From NCBI RefSeq assembly GCF_009834535.1, contig NC_045712.1, forward strand, positions 26,474,001 to 26,538,000: a stretch of DNA of 64,000 nucleotides, read 5' to 3'. The notes beneath the pieces are model-generated. The model was given only the letters and a program-made list of their open reading frames with translations. It did not search any database and was not told the origin of the DNA. The DNA is from Camelus ferus. Taxonomy: Eukaryota. The position numbers were made by a program, and so were the translations under genes. Positions 34,306-62,769 of this stretch are shown here, piece after piece; the first letter of the stretch is position 1, and each line of letters begins with the position of its first letter.

Positions 34306-34311
34306 TTTATT
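34306..34311 (-). terminator. Poly(A) signal, gene A
   Basis: AATAAA about 100 nt after the stop. Confidence 0.7.
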
Positions 34312-36279: not shown

Positions 36280-36319
36280 GGTCCCCGAGTCTGCCTCCTC
36301 CCAGCCCACAGGACCCTCC

Positions 36320-36354
36320 TTTATGCTCAGCCTGGGCCTGATGCAATTGCTCAA
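36320..36354 (-). promoter_or_regulatory. Cathelicidin A proximal promoter: C/EBP site + C/EBP-ATF-like site + TATA-like CATAAA
   Basis: Minus strand TTGAGCAATTGCATCA...GAGCATAAAGG, with CATAAA about 40 nt upstream of the ATG. The same module precedes all four genes. Confidence 0.65.
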
Positions 36355-40599: not shown

Positions 40600-41340
40600 C
40601 ACCATATGGACTACAGTGCAGCCGTTTCAAAAAATGAGCTGGCAACTACCCAAATATCCTTCACAAGTAAAAGAATAAGCGTATTCTGGTATATTTATAC
40701 AGCGGACTACAACTTAGCAACAAAATATGAACGAAGATAATTACACACAATAACACGGAGGATTCTCACAAACATGTTGCATGAAGAAATTACCTGAAAA
40801 GCGTATATACGGTATGGTTCTATTTTCTACACATTTCAAAATCTGGCATCACTGATCTGTGGCGTTCAAAGTCGGGGTCATGGTTAAGGGTAGAAGGGGG
40901 AGGAGACTTCTGGGTGCTGATTACACTTTGGCGTTCACATAGCAAGCACTCAGCAAGCTGTCCATTTATCAGTGGTGTGTTTTTCTTATGTAGTTGTAAT
41001 ATTTCAATTGAAGGTTTTAAAACTAGAAAGTTGCCAGATGTATCTTTAAGGGGAAAAGGCCAATTGCAAAATAAACGTACTAACTGATTCCATTTATGTA
41101 AACATCAGTCACCATAAAGCAAGACACGGTATCTTTATGTGCCTATATGTATATACATGTCTAGAAAAAACATCAGAACAGACACTCACACGATTGATGA
41201 ATGGAGGTTGTTTCTAATGTGGAGATTGTGATGCGTGAGGCAGGAAAGCAAGTTGTCAAAAGGAGTGTATTTGTACTAGGATTGCTTGAATATTTTATAA
41301 GGAGGATATGTCCCTTAACAACGCTTACAATTAAAAAGAA
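40600..41340 (+). mobile_element. Old L1 (L1M-type) 3' fragment; mirrored at about 55750-56490
   Basis: Degenerate L1M 3'UTR motifs (TATATACGGTATGGTTCTATTTT...AAAATCTGGC...ACTGATCTGTGG). Confidence 0.5.
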
Positions 41341-43536: not shown

Positions 43537-43542
43537 TTTATT
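43537..43542 (-). terminator. Poly(A) signal, gene B
   Basis: AATAAA about 50 nt after the stop. Confidence 0.7.
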
Positions 43543-43589
43543 TTTCAGAGTTTGAACAACTGAGCCAGAGTTAGGTGATCATTAGGACT

Positions 43590-45476
43590 CTACCCTGGGC
43601 GAATTTTATCACCAATGTATCCGATTACTTTGCCAACCTTATCTCGAACCCAGTTCACACCGTCATGGAAGAAATCACGAATCCGGCCAAATAACCCGAC
43701 ACTCTGGAGCTGTGCAGCAGAAAGAAACAGGATTCTCATGAGGATTGACTTAGGGAAAAGACCAGATCCCTCCCCACCTGAAAATCTTCCATCTTGGAAC
43801 ACCGAAGGAGAGTTAAGGCACCATTTGACCTCCTTGTCTGTGTCACTTGGAGCACGTGGTTGAATCATCTCTCCCACAGACAGATGAGGACCAAGGTCCA
43901 GAGATGACAGGGGGCTTCCCAGGGGCACAAACCCATCTCAGAAAAGCTGGACGGGAGCAGGGGCAGAAAGGTCCTGTCTGTAGTCAGTGCCTCTCAAGCT
44001 TCAGCACACTCAGAAATCCTCAGAAGGGCTCTTAAAATAGAAATTATTGGGATCCACCACACAATGATTCCGTATTTCTGAGTCAGGCCTGAGAATCAGC
44101 CTTTTTCTCTAGTTGCCAAGAGGGGAGCCCACTGAGAGAACCACTGCTCTAAGGGACTGCAGAGCCCGGCCTGGAGACCTGGGGCTCCGGTGAGGGAGAC
44201 CCAGGGAAGGAGGGCTCTCCTGCCACTACAGGGATGGCACAGAGGGGAATTGGTCCAAAGGCTGTTCCACACACCACCTCCATCAGTAGCCCCTGCAGCC
44301 CAGAAGGGATCACTCACCTCATTACATGTTATATCGAAGTTGTCCCTGAGCTGGTACAGGTTGACTGTCCCCACACACTGTTTCACCACCTGGAAGGGGA
44401 GACTCCAGGTCACACTGGAACCCCTGAGCCATAAACACCCCTCCTCACCCCAGGGGCTGCTAACCACCACCCGCCCCAAGCCTTCTGTTCGGGTCTTGGG
44501 AGCGACCCACCAGGGCCCTAAGCCCCCAGCCTCACCCCATTCTCCTTGAAGTCACACTGCTCCGGTGGCAGCAGTGTCTCCTGGGGACACACGGTCTCCT
44601 TCACCGTGAAGCTCACAGGCTTTGGGGCATCTAGGTCCTCGTCCTGCTGAAGGATCAAAGTGGGGAGACTGGCTCAGGCTCATGCTTCTATGTGTGACCT
44701 GTGTCCCTGCCCCCAGCAGGACAAGCCCCTTTGAGAGCCTGTCCCATGTGCCTGGCCCCGGGTTGGGAGCTGGGCGCAGAGGGGAGGAGGACACAGCCTG
44801 GTCCTGGGCTCCCAGGCACACAGGGAGCAGGAGGGGACCTCAGACCCGCTCTCCTGAGGGGCAGCTCCCCTTGGAGGGGCTGAGGGCAGTCATGGGACAC
44901 CTGCAAGAAAAGACCTTGTCACCGGAACCCCAGGGCTGAGCACAGCCCTTCTCTGGTGGGGACACAATGGAGTGCACAGGGTACTGGAAGCAAGTAAGTC
45001 ACATCCCAGAGCCAGTGACCCCGGCATATCCCCTAGAACCCCCAGGAGTCCCTGGAGCCTGAGAGGGCTGTCAGGGCTCTGTTCCCACAGCAGAGATGCC
45101 AGGCAGAAGGCTCTCACAACGGGAGGGGACCCAGCTCTGGGAGGATTTCTGTAGAGGTGGGATCCCACTTAGAGGGAGTGGTGCCTTCCTGACAGGAGGT
45201 ACAGCGCGAGCAAAGGGAGGGACAGTGTGGCCAAGCCTGGCGGGAGACACCTCCCTCCCCAGCCCCTCCCCGACTCACAGCCTTGGGCGGCAGGTCCAGC
45301 TCCAGGAGGCGGTAGAGATTGGGGTCTGAGGACTGCTCATTGAGGCGATCCACAGCTCGAAGCACCGCCTCCCTATAGCTCAGGGCCTGGGCGCTGGCCC
45401 AAGTCACCGTTAGTCCCAGCAGCAGTAGCCACAGTGACGAGCGGCCCAGGGAGAGGCTGGCCCTCTGGGTCTCCAT
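43590..45476 (-). CDS. Cathelicidin gene B (CAMP/CATHL family), 165-aa precursor with alpha-helical PMAP-37/BMAP-34-like peptide; exons 45476-45279, 44643-44536, 44389-44318, 43709-43590
   Basis: 198/108/72/120-nt exons, all GT-AG, open frame, four cathelin Cys. Exon 4 LQSV|[35 protein letters not shown] has a terminal Gly (amidation donor). Confidence 0.95.
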
Positions 45477-45516
45477 GGTCCCCGAGTCTGCCTCCTCCCA
45501 GCCCACAGGACCCTCC

Positions 45517-45551
45517 TTTATGCTCAGCCTGGGCCTGATGCAATTGCTCAA
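45517..45551 (-). promoter_or_regulatory. Cathelicidin B proximal promoter module (C/EBP + TATA-like)
   Basis: Identical TTGAGCAATTGCATCA...CATAAA module. Confidence 0.65.
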
Positions 45552-48500
45552 GCAGGAGCCTTCCCCACCTGCCCCATCCCTGCCCCCGGCCAGGGTGTGA
45601 GCTGGACTTGCCTCAGGACCTGCTCTTGCCTCAGGGGATTGCTGGGCAGTGGGTGAGGTCTGCCTCCTGTGCAAGGTGAAGAAATGGTTTCTCCATCTCC
45701 CTCACAACATTTTGGCCTCTTCTGGGCCCCGTGGGGAGTTTCATGGGCAGGGTTGCTCCAGAAGGATGAGTCCTCCAGGAGACGGAGGGACCAGGCTGTG
45801 TCCTACACCCTCTCGGCCTCCTCACTGTGACCTCCTCTGAATCAGGCTGAAAGAGTGTATTCACCACACAACCTCCAGCTCCTGGTTCTCCTGGTCCCCA
45901 ACAGGCACTCAGTTAACATATGATAAATAGATGGCAGGACCACCCCCATCTAGTGCCTTTCACACCCATCCACTCCCTAGGCAGACATCAGGGCCACACC
46001 GTCCTATTCTACGGACCCAGGCCTCAGCCAGTCAGGGCATCTCCTCTACTGTCCCCTCTTCTGGATTCTTCTCCTTTGCCTTCTTCACTCTAAAAATGTC
46101 CTGTCCCAGCCCCTTCCAGATGCACACTGTTCCCCTTACCCAGACAGCCAGTAAGAGAAGGCTCATCTACACTCTGACCCCACTATTTGTCCTCTTTCAA
46201 CTCAAGGTCCATGCCTGCTTAACAGCTTTCGAATGATACAACGGCCATGCTGAAGCCTTGTCCTTGCCTTCACAGGTGCCAGGGACCCCTCTGTCTACTG
46301 AAACTGCCCCCTCCCCCATTCTCCCCTGGGACCACCTTCCTGGGTCCACTTCCTGGCCTCCCGGGTGCCTCCTGCTCTGTCTAATCTAAGTACTCAACTT
46401 TTAATAAAACTTTTACTGCAGGGCTTGCACACGTGATCTGTACAGCTTCTCAAAGCAGTTCTCATGCATTCTGGGCACATCCCTTCCTCAGATACTAGTT
46501 ATCAGGGACACACATCACTGGTCTGTGGGTCCGAGGCAACACTCCTGTGAACACCCCTGGTTGTCAGCACAGGGCTGTCTGGGGCTGTTGGCTAGGAGCC
46601 CTCACGGGAGCCCTGAGCTGAGAGCCTGGGAACCCCCACCTGCTCCTTCTCTGAGGGCCCTCCCTGTCCCCACTGTCACCCCTGCCCTGTCCTACCACCA
46701 TCTCCTCTCCTCTGAAGTGTAGCCACAACCTCCAGACTCCACCTTTTCTGGTTCCAGGCTCTTCCCACACCACAGCCCAGTGTTCCCTGCCATTGTCCAG
46801 GGGTCCATCAAACCTCCCGCCTTGAGTCAGGGGCTCAGGGTCTGGATCAGGTTGTCCTCAGGTGCTCACCTGCAAAACCCTGTGTCAGGCCGCCAAGTCC
46901 ACCCCAACCTCTCAGGCCCCTCGGAGCCTCTGCTCTTCTCATATCGCTACACCTGATCCCTCTGACTGCCGTGACTTTTCAGTTTTGTGAAGCCTTATCT
47001 GACCTTCAACCAGAGAAAACAGCAACTCCCCATCTTAGCTCCCACAGCCTCACAAAGTCTCTTCTGACTTGTCCCCAAGGTACTCCCTCTCCAGGGCTCA
47101 GGTTGAGACACCAGGATGGAGTGGCCAGAGAGGGAGGAGGAGGGGGTCCAGCTGGGAAAGTGAATGAGCCGATGTGTTAGAGGATCCCAGAGACCAGATG
47201 CCAATTCTAATCCAGTGTCCCATGGAATGGCCCTGAGACTGAAGGCCTGGGATAGGCCATGGCCACCTGTGACCTGGGGACTCTGGGCAACGGAATGGGG
47301 CACCTCAGAAGGTAACAGCCTGGTCGGATGTGCTGGTTTCGCACTCACCCTTCGAAAAGGAAGGAGAGAGGGGCTTCTGTGCAACCTGGTGTCACAGTCC
47401 GGGTGTTGCCCCAGTGGCCTCTTGGTCAAGCTGTATCCTTTTCCCAAGAAGGAGGAAGAAAAGGAGGTGATTGCAGTAGAAAATAACTAGCAAAACCCAC
47501 GGTGACCGGGTATCAGATCCCCTTGAAATCCTCTCTGTGCTTTCCTGCCTCTGCACCTTTGCGTTTGCTCAGACTTTGGACCGCAGTCTGGGTCCTTGGA
47601 ATGTTGCCTGTCAGGTCCTCAGACTACAACTGCCTGGATGGGGGTGTGCTGTCCCTGCCTCTAGCATCTGGCTTTCCTGGTTTGTCCTCATAGCCTGTCA
47701 GAGCAGACGTGTTCTCAGGAAAGGCTCCTCTGCCCTTGTCCCCAGGTTGGTTGGCCCCTGACTCCACATCTGATCCTTGAGAAACCCTCATGCACCCGTC
47801 GTGCCAACAACCTCAGGGAATGAGCCCTGATCTGCACGGCCCGCCTGCTTTTCTCCTCCCAACCATCCTTCCTGTCTGTGAGACTCCAGAGGCTCCAGAG
47901 CAATGGAACTGGACCAGAACCCCAAACTGTGCCCCTAACCTTGGAAATATCCACCAGCTCTGACTGCCCATTTGATGAGGAAAATGAGACCCATGGGCTA
48001 CGTCATTCCATCAAGGACCTCCTACTCAAAAAATGACAGACTGGGGACATGGAGTCATGCCCCTCAATGACCCACCACCTGTCCTTTTCACAGGGACAAG
48101 GGGAAGGTTTCAGGCCCTGCCCCCTGCCCCCTGCCCTCTGCAGGGACCTGCGATGGCAGCCATGGTGCTGTGAAGGCAGGGATTTGGGTCGAGGGTGAGG
48201 GTCAGGACCCTCCTCTCAGGGTCAGCTTCCTCTTTCCCATGGACCAATTCAGCTGAAACTAGAAGCTGAAAGAGAACTACGAGGTTAAGTCATCCTGGAA
48301 AAGACAGCAGAAGGCATTTAGTGTCTGCAGGCGTGTCTGGGCGCCTACAGGATCGTCACCTGCCAGGACCCACTTATCGGTCAGCACACTAGGCAGCGGT
48401 CCTAGCCCCTGAGACATCTAGGGATCCACAGAAAGTTTTACTTTAATTGTTTAAAATCACAGATGAAAACACTGACATATTGATGAATACATAAGATGAA

Positions 48501-49207: not shown

Positions 49208-51552
49208 ACAGTTTTGTTCTGGTCCAGTTCCATTGCTCTGGAGCCTCTGGAGTCTCACAGACAGGAAGGATGGTTGGGAGGAGAAAAGGAGCCGGGACGT
49301 CCAGATCATGGCTAATTTCCTGAGTTGTTGGCACGACGGGTGCATGAGGGTTTCTCAGGATCAGATGTGGAGTCAGGGGCCAACCAACCTGGGGCAAGGC
49401 AGAGGGGCCTTTCCTGAGAAACACGTCTGCTCTGACAGGCTGTGAGGACAACCAGGAAAGTCAGATGCTAAGCAGGGACAGCAACACCCCCATCCAGGCA
49501 GTTGTAGTCTGAGGACCTGACAGGCGACCTTCCAAGGACCCAGACTGCGGTCCAAAGTCTGAGCAAACGCAAAGGTGCAGAGGCAGGAAGCACGAGAGGA
49601 TTTCAAGGGGATCTGATACCCGTCACCGTGGGTTTTTGCTAGTTATTTTCTACTGCAATCACCTCCTTTTCTTCCTCCTTCTTGGGAAAAGATACAGCTT
49701 GACCAAGAGGCCACTGGGGCAACACCCGGACTGTGACACCAGGTTGCACAGAAGCCCCTCTCCTTCCTTTTCGAAGGGTGAGTGCGAAACCAGCACATCC
49801 GACCAGGCTGTTACCTTCTGAGGTGCCCCATTCCGTTGCCCAGAGTCCCCAGGTCACAGGTGGCCATGGCCTATCCCAGGCCTTCAGTCTCAGGGCCATT
49901 CCATGGACACTGGATTAGAATTGGCATCTGGTCTCTGGGATCCTCTAACACATCGGCTCATTCACTTTCCCAGCTGGACCCCCTCCCTCCTCCCTCTCGG
50001 CCACTCCATCCTGGTGTCTCAACCTGAGCCCTGGAGAGGGAGTACCTTGGGGACAAGTCAGAAGAGACTTTGTGAGGCTGTGGGAGCTAGATGGGGAGTT
50101 GCTGTTTCTCTGGTTGAAGGTCAGATAAGGCTTCACAAAACGAAAAGTCACGGCAGTCCGAGGGATCAGGTGTAGCGATATGGAAGAGCAGAGGCTCCGA
50201 GGGGCCTGAGAGGTTGGGGTGGACGTGGCGGCCTGACACAGGGTTTGCAGTGAGCACCTGAGGACAACCTGATCCAGACCCTGAGCCCTGACTCAAGGCG
50301 GGAGGTTGATGGACCCTGGACAATGGCAGGGAACACTGGGCTGTGTGTGGGAAGAGCCTGGAACCAGAAAAGGTGGAGTCTGGAGGTTTGGCTACACTTC
50401 AGAGGAGAGGAGATGGTGGTAGGACAGGGCAGGGTGACAGTGGGGACAAGGGCCCTCAGAGAAGAAGGAGCAGGTGGGGTTCCCAGGCTCTCAGCTCAGG
50501 GCTCCCGTGAGGGCTCCTAGCCAACAGCCCCAGACAGCCCTGTGCTGACAACCAGGAGTGTTCACAGAGTGTTGCCTCGGACCACAGACCAGTGATGTGT
50601 GTCCCTGATAACTAGTATCTGAGGAAGGGATGTGCCCAGAATGCATGAGAACTGCTTTGAGAAGCTGTACAGATCACGTGTGCAAGCCCTGCAGTAAAAG
50701 TTTTATTTAAAGTTGAGTACTTAGATTAGACAGAGCAGGAGGCACCCAGGAGGCCAGGAAGTTGGACCCAGGAAGGTGTCCCAGGGGAGAATGGGGGAGG
50801 GCAGTTTCAGTAGACAGAGGGGTCCCTGGCACCTGTGAAGGCAAGGACAAGGCTTCAGCATGGCCGTTGTATCATTCGAAAGCTGTTAACAGGCATGGAC
50901 CTTGAGTTGAAAGAGGACAATAGTGGGGTCAGAGTGTAGATGAGCCTTCTCTTACTGGCTGTCTGGGTAAGGGGAACAGTGTGCATCTGGAAGGGCTGGG
51001 ACAGGACATTTTTAGAGTGAAGAAGGCAAAGGAGAAGAATCCAGAAGAGGGGACAGTGGAGGAGATGCCCTGACTGGCTGAGGGCTGGGTCCGCAGAATA
51101 GGACGGTGTGGCCCTGATGTCTGCCTAGGGAGTGGATGGGTGTGAAAGGCACTAGATGGGGGTGGTCCTGCCATCTATTCATGATATGTTAACTGAGTGC
51201 CTACTGGGGGCCAGGAGGCCCAGGAGCTGGAGGTTGTGTGGTGAATACACTCTTTCAGCCTGATTCTGAGGAGATCACAGTGAGGAGGCCGAGAGGGTGT
51301 AGGACACAGCCATTCCCTCTGTATCCTGGAGGACTCAACCCTCTGGAGCAACCCTGCCCATGAAACTCCCCATGGGGCCCAGGAGAGGCCGAGATGCTGT
51401 CAGGGAGATGGAGAAACCTTTTCTTCACCTTCCACAGGAGGCAGACCTCACCCACTGCCCAGCAATCCCCTGAGGCAAGAGCGGGGCCTGAGGCAAGTCC
51501 AGCTCACACCCTGGCCGGGGGCAGGGATGGGGCAGGTGGGGAAGGCTCCTGC

Positions 51553-51587
51553 TTGAGCAATTGCATCAGGCCCAGGCTGAGCATAAA
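51553..51587 (+). promoter_or_regulatory. Cathelicidin C proximal promoter module (C/EBP + TATA-like)
   Basis: TTGAGCAATTGCATCA...CATAAA intact. Confidence 0.65.
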
Positions 51588-51626
51588 GGAGGGTCCTGTG
51601 GCTGGGAGGAGGCAGATTCGCGGACC

Positions 51627-53476
51627 ATGGAGACCCAGAGGCAAGCCTCTCCCTGGGCCACTGCCACTGTGGCTACTGCTGCTGGGACTAGCGGTGCTTG
51701 GGCCAGCGCCCAGGCCCTGAGCTATAGGGAGGCGGTGCTTCGAGCTGTGGATCGCCTCAATGAGCAGTCCTCAGACCCCAATCTCTACCGCCTCCTGGAG
51801 CTGGACCTGCCGCCCAAGGCTGTGAGTCGGGAGGGCTGGGAGGGAGGCGTCTCCCGCCAGGCTTGGCCACACTGTCCCTCCCTTTGCTCGCGCTGTACCT
51901 CCTGTCAGGATGGCACCTCTCCCTCTAGGTGGGATCCCACCTCTAACAGAAATCTTCCCAGAGCTGGGTCCCTTCCCGTCGTGAGAACCTTCTGAGTGGC
52001 ATCTATGCTGTGGGAACAGAGCCCTGACAGCCCGCTCAGGCTCCAGGGACTCCTTGGGGCTCCAGGGATACGCCGGGGTCACTGGCTCTGGGATGTGACT
52101 TCCCTGCTTCCAGTCCCCTGTGCACCCCATTGTCTTCCCACCAGGGAAGGGCTGTGCTCAGCCCGGGTGTTCCAGTTTCAAGGTCTTTCCCTGCAGGTGT
52201 CCCCTGACTTCCCTCAGCCTCTCCAAGTAGAGTTGCCCCTCAGGAGAGCGGGTATGAGTTCCATTCCTGCTCCCTGTGTGGTGGGAGCTCAAGACTAGGC
52301 TGTGTCCTCCTCTCCTCTGCACCCAGCTCCCAGCCCAGGGCCAGGCACATGGGACGGGCTGTCAAGGGGGCTGTCCTGCTGGGGGCAGGGACACAGGTCA
52401 CACAAAGAAGCATGAGCCTGAGCCAGTCTCCCTACTTTGATCCTTGAGCAGGACGAGGACCCAGATGCCCCGAAGCCTGTGAGCTTCACGGTGAAGGAGG
52501 ACCGTGTGTCCCAAGAGGACACAGCTGCCTCCGGAGCAGTGTGACTTCAAGGAGAATGGGGTGAGGCTGGGGGCTTCGGGCGCTGGTGGGTGCCTCCCAA
52601 GACCCAAACAGGAGCCTTGGGGCAGGTGGTGGTTAGGAGCCCCTGTGGTGAGTCTGGGTGTTTATGGCTCAGGGGTTCCAGTGTGACTTGGAGTCTCCCC
52701 TTCCAGGTGGTGAAACAGTGTTTGGGGACAGTCAACCTGTACCAGCTCAGGGACAACAACTTCGATATAACATGTAATGAGGTGAGTGACCCCTTATGGG
52801 CTGCAGGGGCTACTGATGGAGGTGGTGTGTGAAACAGCCTTTGGACCAATTCCCCGCTGTGCCATCCCTGTAGTGGCAGGAGGGACCTCCTCCCCTGGCT
52901 CCCCCTTACCTGAGCCCCAGGTCTCCAGGCCGGGCTCTGCAGTCCCTTAGAGCAGTGGTTCTCTCAGTGGGCTCCTCTCTTGGGAACTAGAGAAAAAGGC
53001 TGATTCTCACGCATGACTCAGACCTACAGAATCATTGTGTGATGTGGAGCCCAGTAATTTCTATTTTAAGAGCCCTTCTGAAGGATTTCTGAGTGTGCTG
53101 AAGCTTGAGAGGCAGTGACTAGAGACAGGACCTTTCTGCCCCTGCTCCCGTCCTGCTTTTCTGAGATGGGTTTGTGCCCCTGGGAAGCCCCCTGTCATCT
53201 CTGGACCTTGGTCCTCATCTGTCTGTGGGAGTGATGATTCAACCACGTGCTCCAAGTGACACAGACAAGGAGGTCTAATGGTGCCTCAAGTCTCCTTCGG
53301 TGTTCCAAGATAGAAGATTTTCAGATGGGGAGGGATCTGGTCTTGTCCCTAAGTCAGTCCTCACAAGAATCCTGTTTCCTTCTGCTTCACAGCTCCAAAG
53401 TGTCGGGTTATTTGGCCCGATTCTTGGTATCGTCCGTGCCGGTGTGAAATTGGTTCTAGATAAGTTTGGCAAATAA
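51627..53476 (+). pseudogene. Cathelicidin gene C (pseudogene as assembled, possibly intact gene with sequencing indels); exons 51627-51821, 52452-52560, 52707-52781, 53393-53476
   Basis: Exon 1 is 195 nt: three single-base deletions scramble the signal peptide ([29 protein letters not shown]) and then restore frame. Exon 2 is 109 nt: a +1 G near 52500 leads to TGA at 52542-52544. Exon 3 is 75 nt (extra AAC). Exon 4 LQSV|GLFGPILGIVRAGVKLVLDKFGK*. Splice sites, promoter module and AATAAA (53558) are intact. Confidence 0.75.
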
Positions 53477-53557
53477 TCGGATAGATTGGTGATAAAATTC
53501 GCCCAGGGTAGAGTCCTAATGATCACCTAACTCTGGCTCAGTTGTTCAAACTCTGGA

Positions 53558-53563
53558 AATAAA
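53558..53563 (+). terminator. Poly(A) signal, gene C
   Basis: AATAAA at the position homologous to gene B. Confidence 0.65.
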
Positions 53564-56500
53564 TTCTTATGAATTTCAAATTCACCTGTCTCTTGTCCTA
53601 CTCTTACCAGGGGTCCTTAACCCCCATTGCCCTCTTGAGTGTGTGTGTGTGTGTGCGCGTGTGTGGTCACTACCGTGAACACAGAGATGGGTGTGGCAGC
53701 TGTTCCTTCCAGGAGGGCAGGGGGAGGCAGCAGGGCCGGGAGGGACAGGACAGGGCTCCATTCTCAGGAACCCCATGCCCTTCACACTCCCCCGCCCTCC
53801 TCCTCCTCCACCAAGTAGGGGCTTAAAGAGACCTAGTCTGTGTGCAGTGCTGCTGGGGATGCTGTTCCTCCTGGTATGGAGGTGACAGTCCAGGAGGACC
53901 AGGTCGCTTGTTAATCACTCGGGGAGACACAGCTCTGTCTCCTGCTGGTGGGCTCTAAGGTCAGCCTGCAGGTACAATGTCCAGATTGTTCCACTTCCCT
54001 CACAATCTGAACACTGAAAGAGCCCACCCTTCTTGGCTTTTGCTCTGGGCATTGAGACACATCAGTCTTTCTCCTGCGGGGTCTCAGATTTCAGATGTGG
54101 GCTTGTGTTCAGGGATCCAATGGTACCACAATTGGCACCATTAGAAGCAAGCCTCCTGCTCATCGGGGTGAAGGGCTCTGCCTGAGTGAGAGACACACAC
54201 AGTGACACACAGGCCACATGTCTGTTTGCCTGGGGGTTTCAGACACTGTCCCTGTCCTGCCCACTCCCCACTCTGTAGCTGACCTTTGCTGGGGGGCAGA
54301 CTGGAATCACGGGGGAGGCGGCAGTCCCGGGAGCAGCCTCAACCAACCATCGCTGGGACTTTTCCCTCATTGGTGGAAACGTCTCTTCTGTTCCTCACTC
54401 CTTGGGGGGCCCACTCCCAGATGTGTCCCCCCTCCCTGAGGTCCCCAGCTGGGTGGAGCCCCTGTCCCCGCTTCAGTGACCTGTCTATTGACTTGTCCTC
54501 TTCTGATGTCGATTCTGCCCGGTCTCACTTCTCTATTTTTCTGCTGGTGCTTCAAAGGAATCGCCTCCCAGAGCACCTGCTTCCTCTTGAATGCTGGCCT
54601 GAGCTCTGCTCCTGGGCCAACCTGCACCAACACACAGAGCCCCGTGTGTCAGAGGGACAGCGGGCGGGACCGCGCAGAGCACGTGCTCTGTAATCTGTCA
54701 GGCTCGTCTGTTCTTGGGGAGCAGTTGGGGCTGATTTCAGGCAGGTTAGAGGAACCCATGCTTCTCACTCTACGTCACCCCAGGTTGAGTGAGGTTCTAC
54801 AGAGGAAACTAAGGGAATTCCTTCTGTCTGCCGCTGGGTACTTCATTGCGACAGGCAGAACAGAGACCGGGGGAGGATCTGAACCACGTCACTGAGCCCC
54901 CCAGCCCCAGACAGGAGCCTGCAGGTGCTGTGGGGGCTGGGGGCCCTGTTGGGGATGGGTGCTGAGGCTCAGGCTTCCGAGGGCAGACCCTAGGAGTGGT
55001 CTGGGATTGGCAGTGTGGGGACCGCCTGAGAGGGCTGGAGCGCGGTAAGGGCTGAAACTGGGAGTGTGTGCGAAGGAATCGGTCTGTCATAACCCCCGTT
55101 ATTAGGTTGCTGCGGAGGGAGGAGCGGAACTCCTCACTCTGCCTGGCCCGCTGGCCCCTGGGAGCTGTGGGAGGGCAGAGTGCTGGGGCAGAGGCGGGGC
55201 CCAGGTCTGAGCCCATTCTCAGAATGAGCTAAGTTCAAGGTTGTTGTGTGGGTTTGGCCGCTGCAGCTGTTCAGCCTCCAAGACATCCATTTACACCTGT
55301 GCATGAACAAGGTCCCTGTGCTCAGTGGGCAGGGTTGTGGGCTGTGATGCTTGCCCCGGAAGACAGCCCCCAAAATTTATCTTGTTCACTCTGTCTGTGC
55401 CTCCCTAGTGGTTCTAACTGGGGCCACAGTTGTGGACATTCGCCCTCACTGGCCCTGAAATAGGTAAATGAACGGTGACTGTCCCTGCTGAGCAAGGCAT
55501 CCCCTGCTTGGAGGTCACGTCCACTGGGGAGAGATTTTCTATGGAGAGGAGGGGAGATGCCCTCCTCTCTCCAGCCCCATCTCACTGAGTTTGGTAACTG
55601 CTCTCAGAGCAGCTCTGGGACCCTTCCCATCGCCAAGGCAAAACCTGCTTCTGGGGTTGTCATAGTGACAACACTGTGAAGAGCACCTGGGCCCACGGAG
55701 TCCTACACCCATCGTGCCTCCTCCTCCTGCTCCTCCTCCCTCCTCACCCACTTCTTTTTAATTGTAAGCATTGTTAAGGGACATATCCTCCTTATAAAAT
55801 ATTCAAGCAATCCTAGTACAAATACACTCCTTTTGACAACTTGCTTTCCTGCCTCACGCATCACAATCTCCACATTAGAAACAACCTCCATTCATCAATC
55901 GTGTGAGTGTCTGTTCTGATGTTTTTTCTAGACATGTATATACATATAGGCACATAAAGATACCGTGTCTTGCTTTATGGTGACTGATGTTTACATAAAT
56001 GGAATCAGTTAGTACGTTTATTTTGCAATTGGCCTTTTCCCCTTAAAGATACATCTGGCAACTTTCTAGTTTTAAAACCTTCAATTGAAATATTACAACT
56101 ACATAAGAAAAACACACCACTGATAAATGGACAGCTTGCTGAGTGCTTGCTATGTGAACGCCAAAGTGTAATCAGCACCCAGAAGTCTCCTCCCCCTTCT
56201 ACCCTTAACCATGACCCCGACTTTGAACGCCACAGATCAGTGATGCCAGATTTTGAAATGTGTAGAAAATAGAACCATACCGTATATACGCTTTTCAGGT
56301 AATTTCTTCATGCAACATGTTTGTGAGAATCCTCCGTGTTATTGTGTGTAATTATCTTCGTTCATATTTTGTTGCTAAGTTGTAGTCCCGCTGTATAAAT
56401 ATACCAGAATACGCTTATTCTTTTACTTGTGAAGGATATTTGGGTAGTTGCCAGCTCATTTTTGAAACGGCTGCACTGTAGTCCATATGGTGGACATAGC

Positions 56501-59294
56501 ATTCGCACCAATACGTGTCTCAAGGGTTTCTAGTTCCCCAACTCGGCCCAACAAAGATACAAGGAAGCACCATGGTTTCTTCCTCTCCCATGCACGTGAG
56601 TGAGGCTCCCGACAAGTGGGACTTCAGGGGGACGCCGACAATGGCCTGTGCTGTGGCAGGCTCTCCATGTGAGCATGTCCTGGGGGTGGCTATGGAGTGG
56701 ATGGCTGCTGTCCCTCTTTCCCCCAGGAGTCTGGAAGGCTCTGTAGAGACTGGGACTCTGATCCTCATGTCCAAGTTCGTATGGGAGGAGTTTCTCTATG
56801 GAGGAGAAGAGGGCCTCCCATGCATGTGTAAGAAATCTCCCATTTTACAAACCAGGAGAAAGAGGTGCAGTTGGTGAAGGTCTGGTTTAAGGTCACGTAT
56901 GTGCTCCCCAGGTTGGGCAGAAGGCAGGACCAGAGGACAGGTCGCTCAGCCCTGACCCTGGCTCCTTCTCTTGTACCATTTTGAAGTCCAGGGCTTGGGG
57001 CTGGGATAAGGAAGTGTCTAAACACAGGTGAGACTGTGCTTTTTCCAGTTGGGGGTTTTAACTGCAGGATGGGATGTCTGCCTCAACCAGACTGGGATGG
57101 GAAATAGAGGGGGATGGGAAAGGAGGGAACCCACGTAGGGTGCCAGGCGGTGGAAACACACTCTTACCAGCTCCAGCAGGACCGTCTGCTCCCACCTCTT
57201 GGCTGGGGTGTCCTCTGTTGGGTTGGGGGGAACGTTAGGAGAGAACCCAAGGCCTAGCCTGACCATCTCGAGGCACAGCTACTGTGACCTTGGAGACCCT
57301 CCCAGTCCTGACCCGGCTCCTTAGACCCCCTTCCCTCTCACCCTGCTCCTCTCGCTGTCTAAGCAAGAACTCAGCCAGGGAATGCAGGAAATGGAGGCAG
57401 TGCCCAGATGCGCCTGTCTACAGCTCACCCTCCCGCTCCCCGTGTGGGCTTCTCAGTTGTGTCTGAGACAATGAGAGCTGGGCTCCCACTCATTGCTGCT
57501 GCGAGTTCCCACCAGGGCAGAGTTTTCCCAAAGAAGTCACAGCTGATAAGAGGCCAACCAATGATCAGACACATGTCTGCTGGACTCCAGAGTCTAAGGA
57601 CCCATCGAGCCCTCGGGGGCCGCTTTCTGCCCTGTTGATAATAAGAGATGCTGTTTCTGGACCATCAATCCTGGTCTCTTTGGTCCCAACTTCTTTCCGT
57701 GGGTTGACTCCTCTATCAGACCTCATCCTTGATCAGCCACCTGTCCCCATGGAAGGATGGGGAAGGGGACCTCAGTCCTAAGGTTTAGGAAACACAAAGG
57801 TGCAGAGGCAGGAAAGCACAGGGAGGATTTCAGGGGGACCTGATACCTGGTCACCGTGGCTATTGCTAGTTATTTTCTCCTGTAATCACCTCCTTTTCCA
57901 ACTCTGACTTGGGAAAATGATACAGCTTGACCAAGAGGCCACTGGGGCAACACCTGGACTGTGTTACCAGGTTGCACAGAAGCCCCTCTCTCCTTCCTTC
58001 TCCATGGCTGAGAGTGCAACCAGGGCCATCTGTCCAGACTATCGCCTTCTGACTTGCCCCAGCCAAACACCGAGAATCCCACAGGTCACCTGAGGCCAAT
58101 TGGTACCCCAGTCATTCCATGGGAGACTGGATTAGAACTTGTGTCATGGTCTCTGGGCCACTGTAACACATTGGCTCATTCATTCTCCCAGCTGAGCTCC
58201 CTTGTCCTCCCACACTGGCCACCTCAGAGCCCTGGAGAAGGGGTCACTTGGGGACAAGTCAGAACAGACTTCCTGAGGCTGTGGGAGCCAAGATAGGAGT
58301 TGCTGTTTCTCTGGTTGAAGGTCAGACAAGGCTTCACATGGTGGAAGGTCACAGCAAGCAGAGGGATCAGGTGCAGAGTCGGGAGGAAGGGAAAGAGCTC
58401 GAGACAGGCCTGAGAGGTCGGGGTGCACGTGGCAGCCTGACCTGAGCATGCGGGGCAGCGAGTGAGGACCGTGGGAAGCATCAAGGTTCAGACCCTGATG
58501 CCGGGAGGAGGTGTGTGAGCTGCTGAAGGCAGGGGGTGAAATGGCCAAATCGGCAATTTGATGGAGCCCCCAGACACAATGTGGAAGGAGAATTGATTTC
58601 TAGAAGAGCCTGGAACCAGAGACGGTGGAGTCTGGAGGTTGTCACTACACTTCAGAGGAGAGGGGGTGGTGGCAGGACAGGGCAGGGGTTACGGGGGGAC
58701 AGGGAGGGCCCTCAGAGGAAGAAGGAGCCAGTGGGGGCTCCCAGGCTGCCAGCTCAGGGCTCCCGTGGGGGCTCCCAGCCGACAGCCCCAGACAGCCCTG
58801 TGCGGACAGCCAGGGTTGTTCACAGGAGTCTTGACTCAGAGACACAGACCAGTGATGTGTGTCCCTGGTAACTGGTATCTGAGGAAGGGATGTGCCCAGG
58901 AATGTGTGAGGACTGCGAGGAGAAGCCATCTGGGTGCACCTGTGCAAGCCCTGTGTATTACGAAGAGGGTCCTGGGAGGAGACGGAGAAAAAAGAGGAAA
59001 CAAGGTGGCAGGAGGGGACTCAGGAGAGCGACACCAGCAGAGAATGGGGCAGGAGGCGGTTGCGGGAGGACAGAGGGAAGCCCAGAGCCTGTGTAAATAA
59101 AGACAGCGCGTCAGCATGGGTTTTGGATCCAGCGACGGCTGGCCAGCTTATAGGGCCTTGAGTGTGAGAGAAAACACATTGGGGTCACGATGCGGGTGAT
59201 CCGATCTCAGGCTTGGTTGTGGGAAATCTCGGGCTTGGTTTTGGGAGGCAGGACAGCAGGACAAGATAGTGGGGTCTGGGGACACGACATTTTT

Positions 59295-60180
59295 ATTCAT
59301 TTTTTTTATTGAAGTATTGTTGAGTTACAGCGTTGTGTTAGTTTCTGGCATACAGCATAGTGATTCAGTTATACGTGTATGTATTTCTTTTCATATTCTT
59401 CTTCAGTACAGGTTTTTACAGGATAGTCAATATAGTTCTCTGTGCTATACAGTAGGACCTTGTGTGTCTATTTTACATATAGTAGCATCTGCTAATCCTG
59501 AACTCCCAGTTTATCCCTCCCCACCCCTTTCCCACTCCTGGTAGCCATAAGTTTGTTGTCTATGTCTGTGAGTGTGTTTCTGTTTTGTAAATAAGTTCAT
59601 TTGTGTCGTTTAAAAAGTCCACATATGAGTGATATCATGTAGTTTTTGTCTTTCTCTTCCTGGCTTATTCACTTAGTATGATAATGTCTGGGTCCATCCA
59701 TGTCGCTGCAAAAGGCATTATTTTATTCTTTCTTATGGCTGAGTAGTATTCCACTGTATATAAATACGACAGCCTCTTTATCCAGTCGATGGACATTTAG
59801 GCTGTTTCCATGTCGTGGCTATTGTAAACAGTGCTGCTATGAACATTGGGGTGCAGGTATCTTTTCGAATTAGAGTTTCCTCTGGATATATGCCCAGGGT
59901 TGCTGGATTATACAGTGAGTCTATCTTTAGTTTTTAAAGGTCTCCACTGTTTTCAATCACAGTTTCACAAAATTACACTCCCATCAACAATGTAGGAGGG
60001 TTCCCTTTTCCCTAGACCCTCTCCAGCATTTTAATAATGGCCATTCTGACCAGTATGAGTTGATACCTTGCTGTAGCTTTGATTTGCATTTATCTGATAA
60101 TTAGCCATATTGAGAATCTTTGCACGTGACTATTGGCCATCTGTATGTCTTCATTGGGGAAATATCTGTTTAAGTCTTCA
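59295..60180 (-). mobile_element. Mirror copy of the truncated L1 upstream of gene D
   Basis: Reverse complement of 36913-37798 with the same flanking TSD. Confidence 0.9.
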
Positions 60181-60738
60181 GGACAAGACATTTTAGGTTG
60201 AGAAAGGCAGTGGAGAAGAATCCAGGAGAGGTGACAGATGGAGCGCAGCCCCTCACTGGCTGAGGGCTGAGTCTAGAGAGCAGGATGGAGGGTTCTTGAC
60301 TGTCTGCCCAGGTGCTGGCTGACTGCATCAGGCTTTGGTTGGAGGTGGTGCTGTCATCCATTCATCGAACTTTAACTAGATGCCTACTGGGTGCCAGGCG
60401 GTGTGTAGAGATGGAGGTTGTGTGGTGAATACACTCCTTCAGCTTGATTCTCAGGAGGTCACAGTGAGGAGGCCGAGAGGGTTTAGGACACAGCCTGGTC
60501 CCTCCGTCTCCTGGAGGACTCAACCCTCTGGAGCAACCCTGCTCATGAAACTGCCCCATGGGGCCCAGGAGAGGCCGAGATGCTGTGAGGGAGATGGAGA
60601 AACCATTTCTTCACCTTGCACAGGAGGCAGACCTCACCCACTGCCCAGCAATCCCCTGAGGCAAGAGCGGGGCCTGAGGCAAGTCCAGCTCACACCCTGG
60701 CCGGGGGCAGGGATGGGGCAGGTGGGGAAGGCTCCTGC

Positions 60739-60773
60739 TTGAGCTATTGCATCAGGCCCAGACTGAGCATAAA
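60739..60773 (+). promoter_or_regulatory. Cathelicidin D proximal promoter module (variant C/EBP site + TATA-like)
   Basis: TTGAGCTATTGCATCA...CATAAA; one substitution at 60745 relative to the other three copies. Confidence 0.6.
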
Positions 60774-60813
60774 GGAGGGTCCTGTGGGCTGGGAGGAGGC
60801 AGACTCGGGGACC

Positions 60814-62661
60814 ATGGAGACCCAGAGGGCCAGCCTCTCCCTGGGCCGCTGGTCACTGTGGCTACTGCTGCTGGGACTAGCGGTGCCTTGGGCCAGCGCC
60901 CAGGCCCTGAGCTATAGGGAGGCGGTGCTTCGAGCTGTGGATCGCCTCAATGAGCAGTCCTCAGACCCCAATCTCTACCGCCTCCTGGAGCTGGACCTGC
61001 CGCCCAAGGCTGTGAGTCGGGGAGGGGCTGGGGAGGGAGGCGTCTCCCGCTAGGCTTGGCCACACTGTCCCTCCCTTTGCTCGCGCTGTACCTCTCCCTC
61101 TAGGTGGGATCCCACCTCTCACAGACATCCTCCCAGAGCTGGGTCCCCTCCCCTTGTGAGAGCCTTCTGCCTGGCATCTCTGCTGTGGGAACAGAGCCCT
61201 GACAGCCCTCTCAGGCACCAGGGACTCCTGGGGGCTCCAGGGATACGCTGGGGTCACTGGCTCTGGGATGTGAATTCCCTGCTTCCAATCCCCTGTGCAT
61301 GCCATTGTCTCCCCACCAGAGAAGGGGTGTGCTCAGCCTGGAGCTTCCAGTGACAAGGTCTTTCCCTGCAGGTGCCCCTGACTTCCCTCAGCCCCTCAAA
61401 GGGGGATGTGCTTCTCATGAGATGGGGTCTGAGGTCCCCTCCTGCTCCCTGTGTGCCTGGGAGCCCAGGACCAGGCTGTGTCCTCCTCCCCTCTACACCC
61501 AGCCCGCAGCCCAGGGCGAGGCACATGGGATGGGCTTTCAAGAGGGCTGTTCTGCTGCGGGGCAGGGACACAGGTCACCCAAGGAAGCATGAGCCTGAGC
61601 CAGTCTCCCCACTTCGATCCTTGAGCAGGATGAGGACCCAGATGCCCCGAAGCCTGTGAGCTTCACGGTGAAGGAGACCGTGTGTCCCAGGAGGACACAG
61701 CTGCCACCGGAGCAGTGTGACTTCAAGGAGAAAGGGGTGAGGCTGGGAGCTGAGAACGCTGGCGGATGCCTCCCAAGGACCCGAACAAGAGGCTTCGGAG
61801 GGTGGTTAGCAGCCCCTGGGGTGAGGCTGTGTGTTTATGGCTCAGGGATTCCAGTCTGAACTGGAGGTTCCCCTTCCAGGTGGTGAAACAGTGTTTGGGG
61901 ACAGTCACTCTGGACCAGGTCAAGGACCAAATAGACATCAGTTGTAATAAGGTGAGTGGCCCTTCTTGTTTTGAGCTGCTCTGGGGAGAGGTGTGGAACA
62001 TCATTTGGACCAGTTTTGTTCTTGTTCATTCAGGGCTTCCTACCCTGGCTCCCCCCTTACCTGAGCCCAAGTCTCCAGCCTGGGCTCTGCAATCCCTTAG
62101 AGCAGTGGTTTGTTCTCTAAGTGGCATTATCACCTGGGAACTATTGGAAAGGCAGCTTCTTAGTCCACATTCAGACCTACTGAGACAAAGTTGGGGTGGG
62201 TCCCAGAAATTTGTATTTTAAGAAGCCTTCCTGGGGATTCTGACTGTGCTGAAGTTTGAGAGGCACTGACTACAGTAATGGGATTTCTGCTTCTGCTTCT
62301 GTCCAGCTGTGGTGGCCAGTGATCCGGGGAGGCCTTGGCATCTCTGTGTCCTGGTTTTCTCATCTGTCTATGGGAGTAGGGATTCAACCACATGCTCCAA
62401 AGTTATAGCCACAGAGTGAATGGGACCCAAGCCTCCAGGAGTGGCTCAGGAGTAGGATGTGTAGAAAGGGACCTGAATCATTTTGATTCTGGATCAGTAC
62501 TGACAAGAAGCCTGTTTCTTCCTGGTTCACAGCTCCAGAGTGTAAGGGGATTTTTTCCACCACCATTCCCACCTGGACCCTTCCCATTTCCCCCTTTCCC
62601 ACCAATCCCGCCAATACCACCATTTCCATTTCCGCGGCCGTTTGTTAGAAGACGACGGTGA
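60814..62661 (+). CDS. Cathelicidin gene D (inverted copy of gene A), 168-aa precursor with the same Pro/Phe-rich peptide; exons 60814-61011, 61629-61736, 61880-61951, 62533-62661
   Basis: 198/108/72/129-nt exons, GT-AG, open frame. Signal [29 protein letters not shown]. Exon 4 translates identically to gene A. Confidence 0.93.
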
Positions 62662-62763
62662 AGGATTGGCTGATACCTTGCCCATCAGAGGACTCTGCTG
62701 AATTGTGAGCCCCCGGAAGTCCTAAGGGTCTTTTTTATTCTGGCTCAGTGTTTCAGATTCTGA

Positions 62764-62769
62764 AATAAA
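62764..62769 (+). terminator. Poly(A) signal, gene D
   Basis: AATAAA at the position homologous to gene A. Confidence 0.7.

What the first reader, a model, noticed from the sequence alone, without database searches (positions are those of the whole stretch)
53405..53484. All-nonsynonymous divergence between paralogous peptide exons B and C (positive-selection signature)
Seen in sequence, codon by codon, B to C over the first 23 peptide codons: CGG>CCG, CGT>CTT, GAT>GGT, TTC>ATC, TTC>GTC, CAT>CGT, GAC>GCC, AAC>AAA, TGG>TTG, CGA>CTA, GTT>TTT. That is 11 substitutions, none synonymous. Ten are at codon positions 1 or 2, and several swap charged residues for hydrophobic ones. The adjacent end of intron 3 differs at about 10 of 110 sites. 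Sequence after the new stop is almost unchanged. Inference: if about 75% of random changes are nonsynonymous, 11/11 has a chance of roughly 4%, which favours adaptive retuning over random error or neutral decay.
Basis: partly seen in the sequence, partly recalled or inferred. Interest (0 to 1): 0.7.

Follow-up and report, generated by a model that had tools for sequence, protein, structure and literature searches.

The report
Fast-evolving camel cathelicidin peptide exon
Two neighbouring camel antimicrobial-peptide (cathelicidin) genes differ in their peptide-coding exon only by amino-acid-changing substitutions; the difference is real and fits positive selection, but this is the usual behaviour of the family and both peptides are already published.

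Summary
Gene B (minus strand, exon 4 at 43590-43709) and gene C (plus strand, exon 4 at 53393-53476) differ at 11 of the first 23 mature-peptide codons. All 11 differences are nonsynonymous. A 1-bp deletion creates C's early stop.

The differences are not base-call errors. Contigs from five DNA runs of three organisms reproduce C's exon 4 exactly, and so does an independent Camelus bactrianus assembly.

The window is a Camelus cathelicidin cluster. Both peptides are already listed in Table S2 of PMC9146984: C as a '23-residue MAP-like' cathelicidin, B as 'Vp35-like'.

B and C are old paralogs, not a recent B-to-C conversion. About 4 changes are shared with alpaca Vp26, about 6.5 are specific to C, and about 1 lies on B.

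The pairwise test is marginal. Six camelid genes together give 33 nonsynonymous to 2 synonymous changes, with omega about 7 (P about 0.001).

Caveat: C as assembled in this window carries frame-breaking indels in exons 1 and 2. The C. bactrianus copy is intact (154 aa), and RNA runs contain C's exon 4.

This is a known phenomenon in a known family. The same scan also noted this stretch, the Pro-rich gene A and the palindrome on this same window.

The parts
53405..53473 (+). Gene C mature peptide, 23 codons: GLFGPILGIVRAGVKLVLDKFGK
   Evidence: Translation. Identical to the '23-residue MAP-like' cathelicidin of C. dromedarius and C. bactrianus in Table S2 of PMC9146984. Reproduced exactly by contigs from 5 DNA runs and by L003.
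53393..53476 (+). Gene C exon 4 coding part: LQSV pro-piece, peptide, and TAA stop at 53474-53476 made by a 1-bp deletion
   Evidence: Alignments. The synonymous CAG/CAA difference is at 53398.
53482..53484 (+). Relic TAG (TAC>TAG) shared with alpaca Vp26, where it is the in-frame stop. In C it is out of frame, behind the newer TAA.
   Evidence: Exon-4 alignment.
53558..53563 (+). Poly(A) signal AATAAA of gene C
   Evidence: Sequence. RNA-run contigs end at 53580.
51627..51821 (+). Gene C exon 1 as assembled: 195 nt with three 1-bp deletions that scramble the signal-peptide core
   Evidence: No contig at 98% likeness or better covers 51400-52015 in any run laid. The deletions are absent from the intact copy in L003.
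52452..52560 (+). Gene C exon 2 as assembled: 109 nt, with an extra G at 52499 that gives a stop inside exon 2
   Evidence: The extra G is present in contigs of X2, X3 and X11, and absent in X1, X6, X16 and L003.
52707..52781 (+). Gene C exon 3: 75 nt, with an in-frame extra codon (DNNFD)
   Evidence: The same codon is present in L003 and L001.
43590..43709 (-). Gene B exon 4: LQSV plus the 35-residue peptide [35 protein letters not shown] plus stop
   Evidence: It is the Vp35-like cathelicidin of Table S2 of PMC9146984. Exon 4 is identical in L002 and L004.
44318..45476 (-). Gene B exons 1-3 (45279-45476, 44536-44643, 44318-44389). The 165-aa reading frame is intact.
34414..36279 (-). Gene A, a Pro/Phe-rich Vp38-like cathelicidin, in the outer part of the left arm
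60814..62661 (+). Gene D, the near-identical inverted copy of A, in the outer part of the right arm
33073..47930 (.). Left arm of the inverted duplication. It is 99-100% identical to the right arm except for about 43000-46000, the gene B body.
49208..64000 (.). Right arm of the inverted duplication. It starts at the 100-N gap (49108-49207). The divergent island at about 51100-54100 is gene C.

Best explanation
B and C are two long-separated paralogs of one alpha-helical ('GLFG', MAP-like) cathelicidin subfamily of camelids. They sit head to head in the two arms of an inverted duplication in a Camelus genome.

Cathelicidin genes keep exons 1-3 (signal peptide and cathelin pro-domain) nearly constant, partly through gene conversion among paralogs. 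Exon 4 encodes the peptide released after the Val of LQSV. It escapes that homogenisation and accumulates amino-acid replacements under diversifying positive selection.

On the lineage leading to C, a 35-residue peptide was first shortened to 26 residues by TAC>TAG. That state is kept in alpaca and llama Vp26. A 1-bp deletion then shortened it to 23 residues. About ten replacements swapped Arg and Asp for Pro, Leu, Gly and Ala, and gained Arg and Lys elsewhere. The result is a much more hydrophobic peptide with the same net charge of +3.

Shown here: the substitutions are real, their N/S excess, their partition over branches, the intact 154-aa gene in C. bactrianus, and the presence of C's exon 4 in RNA-derived contigs.

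Inferred, not shown: that selection was pathogen-driven, that the peptide is made and processed (and possibly amidated after the C-terminal Gly-Lys), and that it is membrane-active.
For: - Identity and age of the two types. The C peptide is listed verbatim for C. dromedarius and C. bactrianus, a related 23-mer is listed in Lama, and B-type peptides occur in all camelids (PMC9146984 Table S2).
- Reality of the sequence. Contigs of X1, X2, X6, X3 and X11 match exactly over 53327-53514. L003 matches 80 of 80.
- Intact gene. The L003 copy has exons of 198, 108 and 75 nt plus exon 4, a 154-aa product, and is called as a gene there.
- Transcription. In RNA runs X15 and X17 exon 4 has depth 89-237, against 4-12 for intron 3. 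One contig starts at 53391 and contigs end 17 nt after AATAAA.
- Selection, pairwise. Nd = 11 and Sd = 0 on 52.3 and 16.7 sites. dN is 0.21 against 0.078 in introns (P = 0.002).
- Selection, family level. There are 33 N to 2 S changes on a six-gene tree (P = 0.004). A GY94 M0 model gives omega 6.5-7.4, 2dlnL 10.6-12.2, P = 0.0005-0.001.
- Contrast within the gene. bacB and bacC differ at 0 of 198 sites in exon 1, and Nd = 4, Sd = 2 in exons 2-3, while the introns differ by 7.35%.
- Concerted evolution outside exon 4. The intron tree groups paralogs by lineage, whereas exon 4 groups them by peptide type.
- Net charge of +3 is kept in B35, C23, Vp26 and the Lama 23-mer, while mean hydrophobicity rises from -0.01 to +0.34.
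- General precedent. Positive selection in mammalian cathelicidin mature peptides is published (PMC5564380).
Against: - The pairwise B-C test is weak. Over the 27 codons up to C's stop, i.e. with the synonymous change at 53398, it is 11 N to 1 S. P is about 0.18 by site counts and 0.05-0.09 by likelihood ratio test.
- The tests rest on 23-27 codons, on my own implementation of the codon model, and on a topology taken from exon 4 itself. Recombination was not modelled.
- Nine of the 11 changes are transversions, whereas the introns show 1:1. A transversion-biased process would lower the expected synonymous share (P rises to 0.059 at kappa 0.5).
- In this window C has three 1-bp deletions in exon 1 and a +1 in exon 2. 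The +1 is seen in three runs, so some C alleles may be null.
- None of the 14 camelid proteins retrieved and read (P0001-P0014), out of the 120 listed of 235 hits, carries the C peptide.
- No spliced exon 3-exon 4 contig specific to C was seen.
- No activity data exist for the 23-mer. No paper in the searched library holds its sequence in the main text.
Confidence: 0.7

Rival explanations
1. Neutral decay. C is a dead copy, and the replacements are what unconstrained drift happens to give in 69 nt.
For: As assembled, C has exon 1 of 195 nt, exon 2 of 109 nt with a stop, and a 1-bp deletion in exon 4. The exon 2 insertion is present in contigs of X2, X3 and X11. None of the 14 camelid proteins read from the exon-1 search carries the C peptide. 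The pairwise test loses significance when the neighbouring synonymous change is counted.
Against: An intact 154-aa gene with the same exon 4 exists in GCA_048773025.1. Exon 4 is identical in three organisms. A 23-residue reading frame ending in GK is also kept in Lama. Drift predicts N:S of about 3:1, not 33:2, and dN equal to intron divergence, not 2.7 times it. Net charge is conserved. RNA contigs hold exon 4 at high depth. The exon 1 lesions are private to this assembly and have no read support.
Confidence: 0.13
2. The cluster of substitutions was imported in one or a few steps by gene conversion from a more distant paralog, so the sites are not independent events and the N/S test is inflated.
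For: Conversion is active here. The C. ferus gene at the B position is a B/C mosaic, C-like from intron 1 to intron 2. Introns cluster by lineage. Exon 1 is identical between bacB and bacC. The B/C gene body is a 7%-divergent island inside otherwise identical arms. The changes are transversion-rich and dense.
Against: No donor was found. The Vp24-like gene encodes its similar IVR motif with different codons. No other match to the C peptide region exists in the window or in eight loci from four genomes. The changes are nested in time: some are shared with alpaca Vp26, some with the Lama 23-mer, and some are specific to Camelus C. That pattern fits stepwise accumulation.
Confidence: 0.1
3. Sequencing or assembly error, or B and C being two haplotypes of one locus joined head to head at the gap.
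For: A 100-N gap sits at the centre of the inverted duplication. This assembly has homopolymer-type lesions: seven 1-bp G/C deletions at 51599-51837, and a compensated +C/-G pair in B's exon 2. The C. ferus assembly shows only one arm next to a different gene.
Against: Exon 4 of C is reproduced exactly by five independent DNA runs. B and C occupy separate places about 45 kb apart, in opposite orientation, in the chromosome-level C. bactrianus assembly, with the same 'identical arms, divergent gene' pattern. RNA runs X16 and X17 hold words of both B and C.
Confidence: 0.03

Closest known systems
23-residue MAP-like cathelicidins of Camelus (Table S2 of PMC9146984, Membranes 2022)
   Same: The C peptide is identical over 23 of 23 residues. 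The genomic neighbour is also the same: the paper finds the 23-mer and the Vp38-like gene on one C. bactrianus contig, matching the C-D pair here.
   Different: The paper only lists the peptide. It gives no evolutionary analysis, no expression data and no comment on gene integrity. The copy in this window has frame-breaking indels in exons 1-2.
Vp35-like cathelicidins (VpCATH-35 of alpaca; CdPG-3 of dromedary, PMC12872550)
   Same: B is the Camelus member of this group. It differs from alpaca Vp35 at 3 of 35 residues. CdPG-3 corresponds to the third paralog type (E, L004 18023-20203), which that paper reports as antibacterial and alpha-helical.
   Different: C shares only 12 of 23 residues with B, is 12 residues shorter, and is far more hydrophobic.
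Vp26-like cathelicidins of Vicugna and Lama (same Table S2)
   Same: They share with C the derived TAC>TAG, GAT>GGT, TTC>ATC and GTT>TTT. This makes them the nearest relatives of the C type.
   Different: Vp26 stops at the TAG and so has 26 residues. C has an earlier stop from a 1-bp deletion, plus six further replacements.
Positive selection on mammalian cathelicidin mature peptides (for example CAP18/LL-37, PMC5564380), with the general rule of a conserved pro-region and a variable exon 4
   Same: The pattern is the same: the cathelin exons are constrained or homogenised, and the mature peptide has omega above 1.
   Different: That work compares orthologs of a single-copy gene. Here the contrast is among tandem or inverted paralogs, with gene conversion acting on the rest of the gene.

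Membership tests
Cathelicidin gene family (Pfam PF00666 cathelin-like domain) | Four exons and three introns, with exons 1-3 of about 198, 108 and 72 nt encoding the signal peptide and cathelin domain | tested here: met
   B, A and D are 198/108/72 with GT-AG introns. C in the window is 195/109/75 and so frame-broken, but its counterpart in L003 is 198/108/75 and intact.
Cathelicidin gene family (Pfam PF00666 cathelin-like domain) | Cathelin-like pro-domain with four conserved cysteines | tested here: met
   The four Cys are present in B and in bacC. An exon-1 search returns 235 proteins at E of 1e-10 or less; all 120 listed carry PF00666, and the best are Camelus cathelicidins.
Cathelicidin gene family (Pfam PF00666 cathelin-like domain) | N-terminal signal peptide | tested here: inconclusive
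   B and bacC have the hydrophobic core LWLLLLGL. In the window's C the core is scrambled by three 1-bp deletions, which have no read support. No signal-peptide predictor was run.
Cathelicidin gene family (Pfam PF00666 cathelin-like domain) | Variable exon 4 encoding a peptide released by cleavage after Val (elastase-type site) | not testable with these tools
   The LQSV motif precedes the peptide in all four genes. Cleavage is inferred from established knowledge of artiodactyl cathelicidins and is assumed in PMC9146984 and PMC12872550.
Cathelicidin gene family (Pfam PF00666 cathelin-like domain) | Antimicrobial or membrane activity of the released peptide | not testable with these tools
   Only computed properties are available: net charge +3, mean hydrophobicity 0.34, helical moment 0.35. 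No published assay of the 23-mer was found.
Genes under positive (diversifying) selection | dN/dS significantly above 1 in the region concerned | tested here: met
   For six genes and 23 codons, omega is 6.5-7.4 and P = 0.0005-0.001, with 33 N to 2 S changes. The B-C pair alone gives P about 0.01 by likelihood ratio test and 0.03-0.05 by site counts. It is not significant by site counts, and borderline by likelihood ratio test (P 0.05-0.09), when the four pro-piece codons are added.
Genes under positive (diversifying) selection | The signal is not produced by recombination, by alignment or by sequencing error | tested here: inconclusive
   Sequencing error is excluded. The alignment is gap-free in the 23 codons. 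Recombination was not formally screened, and gene conversion is evident elsewhere in these genes.

The most novel reading that the evidence does not exclude
The 2-3 kb B/C gene body is a selection-protected island. The two arms of a roughly 13.5-kb inverted repeat are kept identical over about 9.5 kb by arm-to-arm gene conversion. Conversions that would erase the difference between the two peptides are removed by selection. Recombination between the identical arm parts flips the interior, so B and C swap sides between haplotypes or assemblies. The C. ferus B/C mosaic would then be a partial conversion caught in the act.
Probability: 0.3. Interest if true: 0.55.

Novelty: new member of a known kind. 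Interest (0 to 1): 0.3.

Why it matters
This is a clean, small example of how an antimicrobial-peptide family diversifies. The secretion and pro-domain exons are held constant or homogenised, while the peptide exon is remodelled by replacement substitutions and by two successive truncations, from 35 to 26 to 23 residues, at constant net charge.

For camel immunology, it singles out the hydrophobic 23-mer as the most derived member of its subfamily and as untested. It also warns that some copies, including the one in this assembly, may be null alleles.

For genome work, it shows that this cathelicidin cluster contains identical inverted arms. Assemblies resolve them differently, so gene models here, such as the chimeric 198-aa C. 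ferus protein, need care.

Tried and rejected
1. Base-call or assembly error in exon 4. Rejected: five DNA runs and an independent assembly match exactly.
2. C as a plain pseudogene. My first reading, from the exon 1-2 frameshifts. Downgraded after finding the intact 154-aa gene in L003 and seeing that the exon 1 lesions are private to this assembly.
3. Micro-conversion from the Vp24-like paralog, whose peptide has a similar IVR..K motif. Rejected: its codons differ, ATA GTA AGA against ATC GTC CGT. No other donor was found.
4. B and C as alleles joined by mis-scaffolding. Rejected for the genes themselves, since they occupy two separate loci in GCA_048773025.1. The orientation of the interior in this window remains open.
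5. Alpaca as the source species. Rejected: B is 99.6% identical to C. bactrianus, 98.2% to dromedary, and 92-93% to the alpaca genes.
6. Look-up of P0003's gene failed because it is not on record.
7. The exon-1 protein search did not return a C-type protein among the 14 camelid proteins read.
9. The reads could not settle exon 1 of C. Only a high-depth paralog-consensus contig lies there at 96% likeness, and none at 98%.
Full report
**What is at the coordinates.** The window holds four cathelicidin genes and no others (tblastn).
- A: 36279-34414, minus strand.
- B: 45476-43590, minus strand.
- C: 51627-53476, plus strand.
- D: 60814-62661, plus strand.

A and D encode a Pro/Phe-rich 38-residue peptide. 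B encodes the 35-residue [36 protein letters not shown]'s exon 4 reads LQSV followed by the 23-residue GLFGPILGIVRAGVKLVLDKFGK and a stop. The finding's span, 53405-53484, is C's mature peptide, its stop and eight more bases.

**Check of the observation.**
- Nei-Gojobori counting gives 16.7 synonymous and 52.3 nonsynonymous sites, with Sd = 0 and Nd = 11.
- The chance of no synonymous change among 11 is 0.018-0.059, depending on the transition/transversion weighting.
- The last 110 nt of intron 3 differ at 10 sites.
- The stretch behind C's stop differs at one site, apart from the 1-bp deletion (AAAGTAATC to AAATAATC) that creates the TAA.

Two things were missed:
- A synonymous CAG/CAA difference lies 7 nt upstream in the same exon, at 53398. 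Over the 27 codons of exon 4 up to the stop the count is 11 to 1, which is not significant by site counts (P about 0.18).
- The density of 11 differences in 69 nt is matched or exceeded by 2% of intron windows, with a maximum of 13.

Against the intron divergence of 7.8% (108 of 1383 sites, transitions to transversions 54:54), 11 changes on 52 nonsynonymous sites is an excess (P = 0.002).

**Are the bases real?**
- Logan contigs of five DNA runs (X1, X2, X6, X3, X11) cover 53327-53514 or 53388-53514 with no difference. These runs come from three organisms and several studies.
- C-specific contigs with 0-2 differences tile 52016-53632.
- An independent chromosome-level C. bactrianus assembly (GCA_048773025.1, locus L003) carries the same 80 bases exactly.

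**Which genome, and is the peptide known?** B is 99.6% identical to a C. bactrianus gene, 98.2% to the dromedary gene, and 92-93% to the alpaca genes. The window's left flank matches C. bactrianus at 99.85%.

Table S2 of PMC9146984, a genome-mining survey of all living camelids, lists:
- C's peptide verbatim, as a '23-residue MAP-like' cathelicidin of C. dromedarius and C. bactrianus;
- a related 23-mer, GILGPILRIVAAGLDWLQHKRGK, in both Lama species;
- B's peptide among 'Vp35-like' cathelicidins;
- the A/D peptide among 'Vp38-like' ones.

A second paper tests a third type of the same subfamily, CdPG-3, and finds it helical and antibacterial (PMC12872550). No paper in the searched library holds the 23-mer in its main text. 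It appears catalogued but unstudied.

**History of the differences.** I fetched the orthologous regions of C. ferus (L001), C. dromedarius (L002), C. bactrianus (L003, L004) and alpaca (L005, L006). I then aligned exon 4 of six distinct genes: B, alpaca Vp35c, the third Camelus paralog E, alpaca Vp35b, C, and alpaca Vp26.
- Exon 4 groups the genes by peptide type across the camel/llama split: B with Vp35c, E with Vp35b, C with Vp26.
- C and Vp26 share TAC>TAG, GAT>GGT, TTC>ATC and GTT>TTT.
- In Vp26 the TAG is the stop, giving 26 residues. In C it survives as an out-of-frame relic at 53482-53484, behind the newer TAA.
- The order was therefore 35 residues, then 26, then 23. Lama has both a 26-mer and a 23-mer, so all of this predates the Camelini/Lamini split.
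- Parsimony on this tree puts 4 replacements on the stem shared with Vp26, 6.5 on C's own branch and 1.25 on B's. For example, His11 of B is derived, while Arg is found in C, E and all three alpaca genes.

'B to C' is thus a comparison of two old lineages, with most change on C's side.

**Selection.**
- Over the tree the 23 mature codons show 33 nonsynonymous and 2 synonymous changes, where sites predict about 3:1 (P = 0.004).
- My own GY94 one-ratio likelihood model gives omega 6.5-7.4. It rejects omega = 1 with 2dlnL of 10.6-12.2 (P = 0.0005-0.001) under three codon-frequency settings.
- With the four pro-piece codons added, omega is 3.2-3.9 (P = 0.004-0.015).
- The B-C pair alone gives P about 0.01 for 23 codons and 0.05-0.09 for 27 codons.
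- Within one assembly, bacB and bacC have no difference in the 198 nt of exon 1. Exons 2-3 show Nd = 4 and Sd = 2, while the introns differ by 7.35%.
- The intron tree clusters paralogs by lineage, the mark of concerted evolution, while exon 4 does not.

This is the classical cathelicidin pattern of a conserved pro-region and a hypervariable mature peptide, and positive selection on mammalian cathelicidin peptides is published (PMC5564380).

Caveats: the alignment is very short, the topology comes from exon 4 itself, recombination was not modelled, and 9 of the 11 changes are transversions.

**What the changes do (inferred).** C loses three Arg and two Asp to Pro, Leu, Gly and Ala. It gains Arg11 and Lys15, and loses the tail. 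Net charge stays at +3, as in Vp26 and the Lama 23-mer. Mean Eisenberg hydrophobicity rises from -0.01 to +0.34, and the helical moment stays moderate. This fits a shift toward a shorter, more hydrophobic membrane-active helix at constant cationicity. Nothing here tests activity.

**Is C a working gene?** In this window C is not readable as a normal precursor.
- Exon 1 has three separate 1-bp deletions. The frame is restored but the signal-peptide core is scrambled.
- Exon 2 has an extra G at 52499, which leads to a stop inside exon 2.
- Exon 3 has an in-frame extra codon.

The evidence on these lesions is mixed.
- The exon 1 lesions belong to a cluster of seven 1-bp G/C deletions and about 14 substitutions at 51544-52005 that are private to this assembly.
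- No contig at 98% likeness or better covers 51400-52015 in the four runs laid at 98%. At 96%, only a high-depth paralog-consensus contig lies there.
- B's exon 2 in this window also has a compensated +C/-G pair that is absent from other assemblies. This suggests homopolymer errors in this assembly.
- The extra G in exon 2, however, is present in contigs of X2, X3 and X11. It is absent in X1, X6 and X16.
- The C. bactrianus copy (L003 656-2840) is intact, with exons of 198, 108 and 75 nt plus exon 4. It is called there as a 154-aa product.
- RNA-type runs X15 and X17 hold C's exon 4 with no difference, at depth 89-237 against 4-12 for intron 3. One contig starts at 53391, and contigs end 17 nt after the AATAAA at 53558-53563. 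This points to a processed transcript, but no C-specific exon 3-exon 4 junction contig was seen.

My reading is that the gene lineage is functional, and that this copy is either partly mis-assembled or a null allele.

**Genomic setting.**
- Positions 33073-47930 and 64000-49208 form an inverted duplication around a 100-N gap.
- The arms are 99-100% identical except across the B/C gene body, where they differ by 5-9.5%.
- The same picture holds in GCA_048773025.1. The two arms there (L003, L004) have 0 mismatches over about 9.5 kb but 15-42 per 500 columns across the gene. C and B lie head to head about 45 kb apart.
- Relative to that assembly, the window has B and C on swapped arms. The exchange falls somewhere in the identical stretch. 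That is what recombination between inverted repeats would give, and equally what a scaffolding choice would give.
- In C. ferus (L001) the gene at the B position is a mosaic: B-like exon 1, C-like intron 1 to intron 2, B-like intron 3 and exon 4, with an extra C that breaks the frame. The annotated 198-aa protein P0001 reflects this.
- B and C are therefore true paralogs. RNA runs X16 and X17 hold words of both. The orientation of the interior in this window is uncertain.

**Rejected ideas.** A short conversion from the Vp24-like paralog, whose peptide has a similar IVR..K motif, is excluded by its different codons. No other donor for C's peptide region exists in the window or in the eight loci.

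**Verdict.** The phenomenon and both peptides are already known. Interest is modest.

Noticed in passing
window 33073-47930 and 49208-64000; gap 49108-49207: An inverted duplication of about 15 kb per arm. The arms are 99-100% identical except for a 2-3 kb island of 5-9.5% divergence that coincides with the B/C gene body. The same pattern is present in C. bactrianus GCA_048773025.1, where the two genes are about 45 kb apart. The 100-N gap here therefore probably hides tens of kb.
   Followed up: partly
window arms compared with L003 and L004: Relative to GCA_048773025.1, B and C sit on swapped arms. The window's left arm is L004-like in the gene and L003-like at its outer end, and the right arm is the reverse. 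This is either an inversion between identical inverted repeats or a mis-orientation in one assembly.
   Followed up: partly
L001 9857-12045 (C. ferus GCA_009834535.1): The gene at the B position is a B/C mosaic, C-like at about 10292-11089 (intron 1 to intron 2). It has an extra C in exon 4 (GGCCCGG) that breaks the frame. The annotated 198-aa 'PMAP-23-like' protein P0001 is a workaround model with an odd exon 4.
   Followed up: partly
window 51544-52005: A cluster of seven 1-bp G/C deletions and about 14 substitutions that is private to this assembly. It is absent from the C. bactrianus C gene and is not matched at 98% likeness or better by any contig of the runs laid at that threshold. It is probably a poorly polished stretch over a multi-copy exon.
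   Followed up: partly
window about 44575-44590 (B exon 2, minus strand): A compensated +C/-G pair turns CPRRTLL, as in the C. bactrianus and dromedary B genes, into CPQETLL. It looks like a pair of homopolymer-length errors rather than real replacements.
   Followed up: no
window 34414-36279 compared with 60814-62661: A and D differ by a few replacements ([16 protein letters not shown] against [16 protein letters not shown]) and by an 18-bp gap in D's intron 1 near 61089. The annotated C. bactrianus protein P0014 combines A-like exon 1 with D-like exon 2.
   Followed up: no
L004 18023-20203; L002 1662-3860 and 10001-11996: Further cluster members sit next to the arms. Downstream of D in C. 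bactrianus is a third GLFG paralog (E: [35 protein letters not shown]). In dromedary the order is PMAP-23-like gene, Bac7-like CamBac gene, then B, in tandem upstream of B.
   Followed up: partly
window 53477-53511, and alpaca Vp26 (L005, end of exon 4): The former coding tail ([12 protein letters not shown]) stays almost unchanged at the DNA level in C and in Vp26, although it is now 3'UTR there. The cause may be homogenisation by conversion or a constrained UTR.
   Followed up: no
window 53800-54100: The right arm has about 27 private mismatches per 500 columns that neither arm of GCA_048773025.1 shows. The 3' border of the divergent island therefore lies about 0.5 kb further out in this window. 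A (GT)n tract lies at about 53640-53665, near the border.
   Followed up: no
window 29718-29847 and 30111-30295: Two further N runs lie left of gene A. L003 spans this region without gaps.
   Followed up: no
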